A stretch of 63,909 bases of DNA, counting the filler, from Hyphochytrium catenoides (taxonomy: Eukaryota > Protista > Hyphochytriomycota), in NCBI GenBank assembly GCA_900088475.1. It is 15 parts of 15 records of this genome, joined end to end, with 100 filler letters (N's around TTAATTAATTAA, not from the genome) between each part and the next. Parts side by side here need not be neighbours in the genome. Positions count along the whole stretch, not along the records: positions 56,582 to 58,589 come from FLMG01001002.1; 14 more parts are not named here. One strand, 5' to 3'. Below are positions 56,582 through 58,285 of this stretch, in pieces; position 1 is the stretch's first letter; each line of letters opens with the position of its first letter. The notes under the pieces were generated by a model. The model did not search any database, was not told the origin of the DNA, and was given only the letters and a program-made list of their open reading frames with translations. The translations under genes and the position numbers were made by a program.

Positions 56582-58285
56582 ACAAAGCCGTTCTGAAGAT
56601 GCGTTAGCTTGCGCTCGATTACCTAGTCAAGTAAAGGGTTAGGGAGGGAGTGTTGGAAGACGAAGAAAAGGCATAGTAAAGAGAATAGGACTGAAGCGAA
56701 GATTCGTAGAAAAGAGGGGATGAGATTGAATTTAGCAAGCAGAGAGAGAGAGAAGAAGGGGAAGAGAGAGAGAGAAGAAGAGGAATGCAGATAGCAAGAG
56801 GAGAAGAGGAAGGCAGAGAGAGAGAANNNNNNNNNNNNNNNNNNNNNNNNNNNNNNNNNNNNNNNNNNNGAAGGTGCACACTGCAGCGATGTAGAAGTAC
56901 ATGATGGGCTGCTGATAGAGCATGATGAGGTCGTCCAACTCATACGTCGGCGTCGTGTGGCCCGCGAATATTACTGTCGCAGTGACGCCAATGAAGATGA
57001 CAACGGTTGCCACAATGTTCTGCCGTGTCACCTGAGCAAAGGACGGAGAGAGAGAGCGAGAGAGAGAGAGAGAGCGAGAGAGAGAGAGAGGTGCGTTTAG
57101 TTAAGGACTTTCAACTGGCTAACTGGGTGCCAAGAGTAGAGTGGAAAGATGTTAGATTAGTGTTAGTGAGCACACTTCTTGAAGGGAGCCATCAGCTAAA
57201 AGCGAGGGATGAATTGAGAGGAAACCAGGACGATAAGAGCAAGCTGCAGAAGCAACGGGGAAGAAAAGGGAAAAGAGAGCTACGCCAAAGGAAAACAAAA
57301 GAAACAAGAAAGAGGAAGAGATAGGAGAGACGCCAGACGAAGGCGAGTTCAGAAGCGGCTGCCTCCACATTCTGCAGCTCACCTTTTCATTATGGAAAAG
57401 AGGAGCCAAGATCATGTTCCAGACAAGAGAAAGAGCAGCAAGCGGCGCCAGCAACGTCTGCGGCGCCAGCCCAAACGCAATAAAGTCCAGGATGGAGCCG
57501 GAGAGAATGAGAGCAAAGCCCAGCACCCAGAAAGGCTGCTTAAATGGAGGAAAGTCAGCCATCCCCATTCTCTCATACTTTGTCAGGGAATACTTCTGCA
57601 TGTTGATCCCTAGAGCAGCCAGAATAGAGAATATGAGAGAGATAAGGAAGCCTGCGACCCACATGCCCATCGCTGGCCCATCATAAGCCAGCTTGAAGCA
57701 CTTCTTGCTGTTCTTCGCCTCTTTTGAATAGAAAGAGCCATTCCCTCGCGGTTCATAGACGGGAGAACAAGAAGAAGAGAGATACTTCTCTTCCGACAGG
57801 GAGACGCCGCATAGTGTGTGGAGACTCTGTTCACATTCTCCTCTACATAGCGGCTGTGACTCCGTGCCTATCTCACAGACAGGGAAGTAAGGCGCACAAT
57901 GAAGGACACGAAGAGCATCAAGACAAGCGGGAGAGAAAGAGAGAGAAGGCCCCTGAAGAGTGGGAGGAACAGTGTGAAGTAGAGGCGAGAGTGAGGTAGA
58001 GTTTGGGTCAAATGTCTGGAGAGAGATATTTATCCCTCGCGCGGCTAAAAAGTGTACATAGTCTGTCTCCGCTAATCTATCAGCGCTCTCCCAGTCGTTT
58101 GTCGTATGGCAGGTTGCCCAGGAGATGTGTTTGCAAAAGGAAAGAGACGATGGCGTGCCACAGGACGAAGGACACTCATACGCTAGCACGGGAGAGAAAG
58201 AAGAGAGAGAAGAAAGACAAAGCGCTGCAGCAATGGCGGAGGAGAAAGCCCGCGTGAGAGGATTAACATGACTGACGAAGGTCAT
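56582..58285 (-). CDS. NIPA-family (DMT superfamily) Mg2+ transporter with a signal peptide and N-terminal cysteine-rich ectodomain; 3' partial
   Basis: Exon 1 (58285-57383): signal peptide, 12-Cys domain, then WVAGFLISLIFSILAALGINMQK…KQPFWVLGFALILSGSILDFIAFGLAPQTLLAPLAALSLVWNMILAPLFHNEK. Exon 2 from 57031: VTRQNIVATVVIFIGVTATVIFAGH…ELDDLIMLYQQP. Confidence 0.88.

What the first reader, a model, noticed from the sequence alone, without database searches (positions are those of the whole stretch)
57383..58285. Mid1/Frizzled-like cysteine-rich ectodomain fused to a NIPA Mg2+ transporter in one exon
Seen: one uninterrupted exon encodes a signal peptide (…LCLSSLSSFSPVLA|YEC), then a ~170-aa domain with 12 Cys and N-glycan sequons (NIS, NST, NGS), then the first TM helices of a NIPA transporter, so the fusion is not a splicing or contig-join artefact. 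CLDALRVLHCAPYFPVC…QPLCRGECE…C has the Frizzled-CRD pattern (C-x8-C-x3-FP-x-C…CRxxCE). LSFCKHISWATC…WESADRLAETDYVHF recalls the LxFCxxVxY…YDxxAxxxYxNF block of fungal Mid1. Known: NIPA proteins normally have no ectodomain; Mid1 and FAM155/NLF-1 CRDs are separate subunits that cap the Cch1/NALCN cation channels; FZ-type CRDs often bind lipids or sterols. Inference: this could be a cation transporter with a covalently attached sensor or lid (a ligand-regulated 'transceptor'), an architecture I do not recognise as described.
Basis: partly seen in the sequence, partly recalled or inferred. Interest (0 to 1): 0.82.

Follow-up and report, generated by a model that had tools for sequence, protein, structure and literature searches.

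The report
Frizzled-type domain fused to NIPA transporter
This gene really does encode a secreted-type, Frizzled-like cysteine-rich domain joined directly to a NIPA-family membrane transporter. The same fusion is conserved and automatically annotated in dozens of oomycetes and other stramenopiles and alveolates, so this is a divergent member of an existing but functionally unstudied family, not a new architecture.

Summary
Minus-strand exon 58285..57383 encodes a signal peptide, a roughly 170-aa ectodomain with 12 Cys and three N-glycan sequons, and the first helices of a NIPA transporter. After a 351-nt GT..AG intron, exon 2 continues the NIPA domain.

The ectodomain is a canonical Frizzled-type CRD:
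- It has the exact C*C*CX8CX6C*CX3CX7C*C*C spacing.
- Pfam Fz hits 50 of 51 family members.
- PDB profile hits are only ROR2, FZD, Smoothened and SFRP3.
- A high-confidence ortholog model (pLDDT 90) matches MuSK and ROR2 CRDs at Z 8-9.

The Mid1/FAM155 likeness holds only at superfamily level: Pfam Mid1 hits 0 of 51, and FAM155A is absent from the profile hits and structurally weaker.

The architecture is not unrecognised. More than 70 protein clusters carry it: every oomycete genus sampled (in two old paralog groups), plus Cafeteria, Mucochytrium and a dinoflagellate. UniProt names them "FZ domain-containing protein" or "NIPA-like protein 3". I found no paper that describes or tests it.

The window's copy, with one metagenomic relative, is sister to the oomycete group-A orthologs.

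Function is inferred only: an outward-facing ligand- or partner-binding module held tightly on TM1 of a DMT-fold transporter. Moderate interest.

The parts
57383..58285 (-). Exon 1 (301 codons): start codon, signal peptide, Fz-type CRD, first NIPA helices
   Evidence: ORF and translation; Pfam NIPA E 1e-10 and Fz E 5e-5; aligns over aa 35-301 with oomycete orthologues
58181..58285 (-). Signal peptide, aa 1-35 (predicted cleavage VLA|YEC)
   Evidence: Hydrophobic stretch aa 17-36; all homologues begin with a hydrophobic N-terminus just before the conserved ECxSxCGTP
57671..58180 (-). Frizzled-type cysteine-rich ectodomain, aa 36-205. The ten canonical Cys are C51, C59, C121, C130, C137, C147, C151, C159, C173 and C196, with an extra pair C38/C42. 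Sequons N86, N95 and N182 lie in low-confidence, lineage-specific loops
   Evidence: Cys spacing matches the published FZ-CRD pattern (pattern quoted from PMC4256011); Pfam Fz; PDB profile hits to ROR2/FZD/Smo; model and structure matches
57656..57685 (-). Short conserved tether Y201-x-G203-P204 between the last CRD Cys (C196) and TM1
   Evidence: Y, G and P are invariant or at least 90% conserved in 9- and 51-sequence alignments; pLDDT is 82-90 through the equivalent linker of the ortholog model
57383..57655 (-). N-terminal part of the NIPA (DMT-fold) transporter domain, aa 211-301
   Evidence: Pfam PF05653 E 1e-10; hydrophobic helices
57032..57382 (-). Intron 1, 351 nt, GTGAGC...TGCTCAG, phase 0; contains (GA)n/(CT)n microsatellites
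   Evidence: Splice sites read directly. The junction ...FHNEK|VTRQNIVAT... matches the uninterrupted oomycete proteins. The relative L001 has a 72-nt intron at the same position
56870..57031 (-). Exon 2 (54 codons seen), continuing the NIPA domain; cut off by the N gap at 56827-56869
   Evidence: The translation VTRQNIVATVVIFIGVTATVIFAGHTTPTYELDDLIMLYQQPIMYFYIAAVCTF aligns with Lagenidium P0002 and others

Best explanation
The locus is the 5' part of a gene for a single-chain membrane protein. A cleaved signal peptide is followed by an extracellular or lumenal Frizzled-type cysteine-rich domain. About eight residues after its last cysteine, through a conserved Y-x-G-P tether, comes TM1 of a nine-helix NIPA (drug/metabolite-transporter fold) permease. 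It is a divergent member of a conserved stramenopile/alveolate family, sister to oomycete 'group A'. The family is already present in databases under automatic names, but no function has been assigned to it. Shown here: the domain identities, the topology logic, conservation of the fusion across deep lineages and two paralog groups, and a confident single-body model of an ortholog. Inferred: the CRD is a permanently attached outward-facing binding module that regulates or feeds the transporter. Its ligand would be a small hydrophobic or lipid molecule, or a partner protein or glycan, as in other FZ/HFN-type CRDs placed N-terminal to polytopic proteins (Frizzled, Smoothened, NPC1). The transported substrate is assumed to be Mg2+ or another divalent cation only by homology to mammalian NIPA1/2.
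For: Gene structure. Domains: Pfam NIPA E 1e-10 and Fz E 5e-5. Fz hits 50 of 51 family CRDs, best 3.3e-7, and FZ_RECK 18 of 51. Cys spacing CX8CX6C...CX3CX7C equals the published FZ-CRD pattern. PDB profile hits are exclusively ROR2, FZD1/2/3/7, Smoothened and SFRP3. The window CRD model (pLDDT 66) gives ROR2 Z 8.0, MuSK 7.0 and FZDs about 6. The ortholog full-length model has pLDDT 90 and pTM 0.81. In a Foldseek-independent search its CRD matches MuSK Fz (Z 9.3 and 8.6) and ROR2 (8.3 and 8.0). Its membrane part matches SMR/DMT transporters: Gdx 10.1, LicB 9.1, Vrg4 8.9, PfCRT 8.7, YddG 8.6. It also matches NIPA/DMT Atlas clusters. Conservation: 76 of 114 retrieved proteins carry the Fz Cys core upstream of NIPA. 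Named members come from Phytophthora, Pythium, Globisporangium, Plasmopara, Peronosclerospora, Albugo, Lagenidium, Saprolegnia, Achlya, Aphanomyces, Cafeteria, Mucochytrium and Durusdinium. Transcriptome-derived members (MMETSP P0070, P0099) carry both domains on one transcript. Tree: window+P0001 (SH-aLRT 99) is sister to all oomycete group-A sequences (98). Language-model neighbours rank Fz 0.84, then folate receptor 0.68, FAM155/Mid1 0.66 and NPC1_N 0.60.
Against: There is no functional evidence at all for the family. The Pfam Fz score of the window's own CRD is below the gathering threshold. All sequence E-values to solved Fz CRDs are weak (0.005 or worse). Foldseek E-values are non-significant, and Z 8-9 is only at the level the tool calls 'middling'. 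No coordinates were available, so contact between the CRD and the transporter mouth could not be measured; pTM 0.81 and the high linker pLDDT are only indirect. The best structural matches (MuSK, ROR2) are, to my knowledge, CRDs whose lipid groove is closed, which weakens the lipid-ligand idea. Transcription of this very locus is not shown. Only short contigs of relatives in RNA libraries lie on the CRD and 5' region, and none bridges CRD to NIPA. Mg2+ transport by non-mammalian NIPA proteins is itself untested (PMC13022745).
Confidence: 0.85

Rival explanations
1. The CRD is a Mid1/FAM155-type cap: a cation-channel auxiliary dome that here became covalently attached and sits over the cation pathway of the transporter as a lid or ion funnel.
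For: Mid1/FAM155 CRDs belong to the same FZ-CRD superfamily (PMC4256011). With the weak window model, Foldseek against AFDB Swiss-Prot lists yeast Mid1 and S. pombe yam8 first (E 0.46 and 0.73). FAM155A chains appear at Z about 4. The Atlas FAM155B-like cluster scores 0.66. Apart from the cysteines, the invariant ectodomain residues include two acidic ones (D69, E138), which could in principle bind a cation.
Against: Pfam Mid1 (PF12929) hits 0 of 51 family CRDs at E<=1, while Fz hits 50 of 51. FAM155A is absent from the PDB profile hits at E<=10, while FZD, ROR2, Smo and SFRP are present. The high-confidence model's best CRD matches are MuSK and ROR2, with no FAM155A in the top 50. The Mid1 Foldseek hits are statistically insignificant. 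No geometry is available to show a lid position.
Confidence: 0.07
2. The CRD has no ligand-sensing role. It serves folding, ER export or sorting, or homo-/hetero-oligomerisation of the transporter (Fz CRDs can dimerise), or it anchors the protein to cell-wall or matrix components.
For: Closest structural matches are MuSK and ROR2 CRDs, whose known roles are protein-protein rather than free-lipid binding (my own knowledge). N-glycan sequons and long variable loops decorate the domain. CRD sequence identity is much lower (about 31-35%) than in the transporter part, as expected for a scaffold.
Against: All ten canonical Cys, the FPxCE(I/L/M)G motif, D69 and the Y-x-G-P tether are strictly conserved across two paralog groups and several SAR lineages. 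That argues for a specific, constrained function. Ordinary NIPA proteins fold and traffic without any such domain.
Confidence: 0.3
3. The fusion is an annotation or assembly artefact, or two adjacent genes read through.
For: The window is a draft piece with N gaps. Logan contigs of the DNA run are fragmented around 57617-57653.
Against: There is one uninterrupted frame with no stop between the CRD and TM1, and only about eight residues between the last CRD Cys and the first helix. The same arrangement is found in an independent contig (L001) and in more than 70 proteins from other genomes and transcriptomes.
Confidence: 0.01

Closest known systems
Oomycete 'FZ domain-containing protein' / 'NIPA-like protein 3' family, e.g. 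Lagenidium giganteum N0F65_007228 (P0002), Albugo laibachii F0W3L4 (P0003), Aphanomyces euteiches A0A6G0WWV2 (P0009)
   Same: Identical architecture: signal peptide, ECxSxCGTP...FC, the Fz Cys core with FPVCEIG, KCFKL-Y-GP, then nine-helix NIPA. The window aligns end to end over aa 35-355 at 45-50% identity. Intron 1 falls where these proteins are continuous.
   Different: The window's copy (with P0001) branches outside all sampled oomycete group-A sequences. It has two longer, low-confidence loop insertions carrying its N-glycan sequons. It lacks the sequon just before C3 that the oomycete proteins share. No member has been studied experimentally.
Canonical Frizzled-type CRDs (Pfam PF01392: FZD, SFRP, Smoothened, ROR1/2, MuSK, carboxypeptidase Z)
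   Same: Ten-Cys pattern C*C*CX8CX6C*CX3CX7C*C*C and a four-helix core. These are the best sequence-profile and structural matches.
   Different: Only about 15-22% identity. The window CRD has an extra N-terminal Cys pair (C38/C42). It sits on a DMT-fold transporter instead of a 7TM receptor, a kinase or a secreted protein. The lineages that carry it have no Wnt ligands (my own knowledge).
Mid1 / FAM155 (NALF1) CRD of the Cch1/NALCN channel complexes
   Same: Same FZ-CRD superfamily, and an extracellular CRD associated with a cation-conducting membrane protein. Weak structural resemblance (Z about 4; Foldseek E 0.46 to yeast Mid1).
   Different: Mid1/FAM155 is a separate subunit, not fused. 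Pfam Mid1 does not match any of 51 family CRDs, and FAM155A is not found by the family profile. The partner is a four-domain channel, not a DMT transporter.
NPC1 N-terminal domain and Smoothened CRD (FZ/HFN-type CRD placed N-terminal to a polytopic membrane domain)
   Same: Same logic of architecture: signal peptide, disulfide-rich CRD of the same homologous group, then a multi-pass membrane domain. In both proteins the CRD binds a sterol and communicates with the membrane domain (my own knowledge; homology group from PMC4256011).
   Different: Different membrane domains (RND-like, 7TM). The NPC1_N cluster is a distant neighbour only (0.60). No ligand is known here.
Ordinary NIPA proteins (human NIPA1/2, NIPAL1-4; plant ENOR3)
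   Same: The PF05653 domain with nine helices; the model matches NIPA Atlas clusters at TM 0.67-0.73 by hit.
   Different: They lack the signal peptide and the roughly 170-aa CRD.

Membership tests
Frizzled-type CRD (Pfam Fz, PF01392; FZ-CRD of ECOD) | Ten conserved cysteines with spacing C*C*CX8CX6C*CX3CX6,7C*C*C | tested here: met
   C51-x7-C59 ... C121-x8-C130-x6-C137 ... C147-x3-C151-x7-C159 ... C173 ... C196. Pattern taken from PMC4256011. The core regex is found in 76 of 114 related proteins.
Frizzled-type CRD (Pfam Fz, PF01392; FZ-CRD of ECOD) | Significant match to the Pfam Fz model | tested here: inconclusive
   The window scores E 5e-5 and 24.3 bits, below the 32.1 gathering score. 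However, 50 of 51 family CRDs hit Fz at E<=1 (best 3.3e-7), and several homologues carry a precomputed PF01392 hit in the protein collection.
Frizzled-type CRD (Pfam Fz, PF01392; FZ-CRD of ECOD) | Four-helix core fold superimposable on solved Fz CRDs | tested here: met
   Window model: ROR2 Z 8.0, MuSK 7.0, FZD4/5/7/8 5-6, covering residues about 4-166. Ortholog model (pLDDT >90 in the CRD): MuSK Z 9.3 and 8.6, ROR2 8.3 and 8.0, Smo 6.8. Z values are moderate.
Frizzled-type CRD (Pfam Fz, PF01392; FZ-CRD of ECOD) | Disulfide connectivity C1-C5, C2-C4, C3-C8, C6-C10, C7-C9 | not testable with these tools
   Model coordinates are not exposed; this needs the model file or an experimental structure.
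Mid1 / FAM155 CRD (Pfam Mid1, PF12929) | Match to the Mid1 profile, or to FAM155A sequence | tested here: not met
   No Mid1 hit for the window at E<=10 or for any of 51 family CRDs at E<=1. FAM155A chains are absent from the PDB profile hits at E<=10.
Mid1 / FAM155 CRD (Pfam Mid1, PF12929) | Structure closer to FAM155A/Mid1 than to canonical Fz CRDs | tested here: not met
   FAM155A scores Z 3.9-4.2 against 8.0 for ROR2 and is not among the top 50 for the good model. The Mid1/yam8 top ranks in AFDB Swiss-Prot are insignificant (E 0.46-0.73) and come from the pLDDT-66 model.
NIPA magnesium transporter family (Pfam PF05653; DMT superfamily) | Match to PF05653 above the gathering score | tested here: met
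   E 1e-10 and 41.7 bits against a 26.2 cutoff on the partial domain. Full-length orthologues score E 1e-33 to 1e-35.
NIPA magnesium transporter family (Pfam PF05653; DMT superfamily) | Nine-helix DMT-type fold | tested here: met
   Tested for the ortholog only. It has nine long helices, matches NIPA and DMT Atlas clusters, and matches Gdx, LicB, Vrg4, PfCRT, YddG, CST and TPT. The window itself holds only the first four to five helices.
NIPA magnesium transporter family (Pfam PF05653; DMT superfamily) | Mg2+ transport activity | not testable with these tools
   Shown only for mammalian NIPA1/2. A 2025 review states that no non-mammalian NIPA has been characterised (PMC13022745).
Stramenopile/alveolate Fz-CRD + NIPA fusion family (database-annotated, unstudied) | Collinear alignment over both domains, including the ECxSxCGTP, FPxCExG and KCF..Y.GP motifs | tested here: met
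   BLASTP aligns aa 35-355 at 45-50% identity with E 1e-85 to 1e-97 to oomycete members. Invariant columns are listed. The tree placement is inside the family.

The most novel reading that the evidence does not exclude
The Fz-type CRD is a genuine extracellular sensor or hand-over module for a hydrophobic ligand (sterol, fatty acid or lipidated molecule), or for a cation. It gates or feeds the attached DMT-fold permease. This SAR-wide family would then be a 'transceptor' class analogous to NPC1 or Smoothened but built on a NIPA scaffold. It could also reveal that NIPA proteins handle something other than, or in addition to, Mg2+. In oomycete pathogens, many of which depend on external sterols (my own knowledge), this would be a new nutrient- or host-sensing route.
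Probability: 0.2. Interest if true: 0.7.

Novelty: new member of a known kind. Interest (0 to 1): 0.42.

Why it matters
How NIPA transporters are regulated, and even which parts move Mg2+, is unknown (PMC13022745). This family is a natural variant with a ligand-binding-type ectodomain bolted onto TM1. It is conserved in two paralog groups throughout the oomycetes, which include major crop and fish pathogens, and in other SAR protists. That makes it a ready-made handle for asking what NIPA proteins sense or carry, and what FZ-type CRDs did before Wnt signalling existed. For the scan, the main value is corrective. The architecture is real and correctly read, but it is widespread and already machine-annotated, so this locus is not a discovery of a new kind. 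What remains missing is any functional study of the family.

Tried and rejected
- The first CRD-only searches suggested a tiny family: 2 to 5 hits. That was a sensitivity and length-window effect, since the full-length search found about 100. P0004 and P0006 are repetitive, low-complexity false positives.
- Foldseek of the full-length model against the PDB returned only spurious ABC-exporter helices (TM about 0.13). It was superseded by the VIA wide search.
- RNA evidence for this locus: no RNA run of the organism was found. Only short contigs of relatives lie on it: 151 nt at 57855-58005 with 2 differences; 225 nt at 57928-58152; and about 250 nt across the start codon. None bridges CRD to NIPA, so transcription of the fusion is supported only through transcriptome-derived homologues.
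- Literature: six full-text searches found no description of an Fz-NIPA fusion. Pei & Grishin 2012 (Protein Sci 21:1172) reports FZ-CRDs with various architectures in 'Chromalveolata', according to my memory of its abstract. It is not held, so prior description there cannot be excluded.
- Docking of the CRD on the transporter could not be measured because model coordinates are not exposed.
- The organism could not be identified because run names are coded.
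Full report
**What is there**

The piece 56582-58589 carries the 5' part of a minus-strand gene.
- Exon 1 runs from the ATG at 58285 to 57383 (301 codons) and ends ...FHNEK|GTGAGC.
- A 351-nt GT..AG, phase-0 intron (57382..57032) is rich in (GA)n/(CT)n.
- Exon 2 starts at 57031 with VTRQNIVATVVIF... 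and is cut after 54 codons by the N gap at 56827-56869.

The protein begins with a hydrophobic signal-like segment (aa 17-36...SPVLA|YEC). It continues with an ectodomain of about 170 aa holding 12 Cys and three sequons (NIS86, NST95, NGS182). From about aa 203 it enters hydrophobic helices.

**Domain identities**

Pfam places Mg_trans_NIPA at aa 211-301 (E 1e-10, above threshold) and Fz at aa 120-173 (E 5e-5, 24.3 bits, below the 32.1-bit threshold).

The sub-threshold Fz call is backed by independent lines:
- The cysteines fit the published FZ-CRD pattern 'C*C*CX8CX6C*CX3CX6,7C*C*C' (PMC4256011) exactly: C51-x7-C59, C121-x8-C130-x6-C137, C147-x3-C151-x7-C159, C173, C196. There is an additional N-terminal pair, C38/C42.
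- When 51 homologous CRDs were scanned individually, 50 hit Pfam Fz (best 3.3e-7), 18 hit FZ_RECK and none hit Mid1.
- Profiles of 9 and 51 CRDs searched against all PDB sequences returned only Fz-type CRDs: ROR2, Drosophila Ror2, FZD1/2/3/7, Smoothened and SFRP3. E-values were weak (0.005-0.7). FAM155A did not appear even at E<=10.
- The AF2 model of the window's CRD has pLDDT 66. Its two disordered loops are the ones carrying the sequons. Foldseek lists Fz CRDs almost exclusively, though non-significantly. VIA-align gives ROR2 Z 8.0, MuSK 7.0, FZD4/5/7/8 5-6, Smoothened 4.4, FAM155A about 4, Juno 3.7 and riboflavin-binding protein 3.2.
- A full-length model of the Lagenidium ortholog, built on a 105-sequence alignment, is confident (pLDDT 90, pTM 0.81, CRD blocks >90).
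  - In a search of 48,161 PDB representatives that does not rely on Foldseek, its residues 6-147 match MuSK Fz (Z 9.3 and 8.6) and ROR2 (8.3 and 8.0).
  - Its membrane part matches SMR/DMT transporters: Gdx 10.1, LicB 9.1, Vrg4 8.9, PfCRT 8.7, YddG 8.6.
  - It also matches NIPA/DMT clusters in the ESM Atlas.
- Language-model features rank Fz clusters first (0.84, 0.82, 0.81). Folate receptor (0.68), FAM155B/Mid1 (0.66) and NPC1_N (0.60) follow.

The one result pointing to Mid1 is a Foldseek search of AFDB Swiss-Prot with the weak model. Yeast Mid1 and S. pombe yam8 rank first there, but at E 0.46-0.73. I read the Mid1 likeness as membership of the same superfamily, not a specific relationship.

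**The fusion is real and old**

An independent contig of a relative (L001; its protein P0001 is 64% identical) has the same continuous CRD-to-NIPA frame. It has an intron at the identical position and phase, but of 72 nt.

A full-length search with the Lagenidium protein retrieved about 100 clusters.

Named members come from:
- Oomycetes: at least ten Phytophthora species, Pythium, Globisporangium, Plasmopara, Peronosclerospora, Nothophytophthora, Hyaloperonospora, Albugo, Lagenidium, Saprolegnia, Achlya, Thraustotheca and at least five Aphanomyces species.
- Outside the oomycetes: Cafeteria roenbergensis, the labyrinthulomycete Mucochytrium quahogii and the dinoflagellate Durusdinium trenchii.

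UniProt and NCBI call them 'FZ domain-containing protein', 'NIPA-like protein 3', 'magnesium transporter NIPA8' or 'hypothetical protein'. Two of them (P0070, P0099) derive from MMETSP transcriptomes, so the fusion exists on single transcripts.

Oomycetes carry two paralog groups: about 570 aa with FPVCE(I/V)G, and about 640-720 aa with CE(M/L)G. In a quick ML tree, window+P0001 (SH-aLRT 99) is sister to a clade (98) holding all oomycete group-A proteins. Group B sits elsewhere, next to the Mucochytrium/Durusdinium clade. The window's organism therefore lies outside the sampled crown oomycetes for this gene. It could not be named because run labels are coded. Close relatives turn up in plant metatranscriptomes.

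**How it probably works**

Shown: a signal peptide followed by a nine-helix N-out permease puts the CRD on the extracellular or lumenal side.

Shown: the last CRD cysteine is only about eight residues from TM1, and the intervening Y-x-G-P is invariant or nearly so. The linker and both domains are modelled with high confidence as one body in the ortholog. The CRD therefore sits tightly on the outer face of the transporter.

Besides the cysteines, the residues conserved across the family are D69, F134 and E138 across all 51 CRDs, plus W65, P135 and I139 in the nine group-A-type sequences.

Inferred: like other FZ/HFN-type CRDs placed in front of polytopic domains (Frizzled, Smoothened, NPC1), it is a binding module that regulates or feeds the membrane domain. 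The ligand is unknown. The best structural matches are MuSK and ROR2 rather than the lipid-binding FZDs, which keeps a protein- or glycan-binding or oligomerisation role as a serious rival. The substrate of the permease is assumed from mammalian NIPA1/2 only. A 2025 review stresses that NIPA regulation and non-mammalian NIPA function are uncharacterised (PMC13022745).

**Novelty**

I found no paper describing or testing the fusion. An oomycete transporter-expression paper mentions a highly expressed 'NIPA-like protein 2' in Peronospora without noting any CRD (PMC10234565). Whether that protein is a fusion member was not checked.

**Verdict**

The Fz assignment is supported and the Mid1 flavour is not. 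The locus is a divergent new member of a known but unstudied family. Interest is moderate.

Noticed in passing
window 56740-56826 and 57040-57092: Long (GA)n/(GAGAGC)n microsatellites. One lies inside intron 1 and one abuts the N gap. The N gap (56827-56869) interrupts exon 2, so the rest of the NIPA domain is missing from the piece. The 245 nt beyond the gap are purine-rich low complexity with no recognisable coding sequence.
   Followed up: no
L001:1143-1214 vs window 57032-57382: The closest relative (Logan contig, 64% protein identity) has intron 1 at the same codon and phase, but only 72 nt against 351 nt. The window's extra length is largely microsatellite and purine-rich sequence. L001 also shows a further downstream NIPA exon (VHIICYGGMAGTFGGQSVLLAKSTVEL...) after a second intron.
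   Followed up: partly
Proteins P0002/P0079, P0003/P0091, P0045/P0075, P0029/P0073: Each oomycete genome sampled carries two Fz-CRD+NIPA paralogs: group A at about 570 aa and group B at about 640-720 aa. Group B branches nearer a clade that holds the Mucochytrium and Durusdinium sequences than group A. This implies that the fusion and its duplication predate the oomycete radiation.
   Followed up: partly
P0036 (Plasmopara halstedii): A clear Fz-CRD+NIPA ortholog (61% identical to the Lagenidium protein over 99% of it) is named 'Phospholipase D, Pi-TM-PLD' in NCBI and UniProt. This is probably a propagated misannotation.
   Followed up: no
P0096 (Durusdinium trenchii, 905 aa): The dinoflagellate member carries an additional precomputed Pfam domain, PF06705, after the Fz and NIPA domains. 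It is a longer three-domain variant of the architecture.
   Followed up: no
window 57855-58476: Short contigs from two plant metatranscriptome runs and one RNA(?) run of a second coded organism match the CRD-coding and 5' regions at 87-99% identity. This suggests that close relatives of the source organism are plant-associated and express this region.
   Followed up: partly
P0005/P0013 (181 aa, ENA and Logan): A more divergent CRD (29-33% identical to the window's) ends exactly at ...KCVDLAYSGPAYT, that is, at the CRD/TM1 tether. It is probably the first exon of another fusion gene in an unsampled lineage, with an intron placed precisely at the domain boundary.
   Followed up: no
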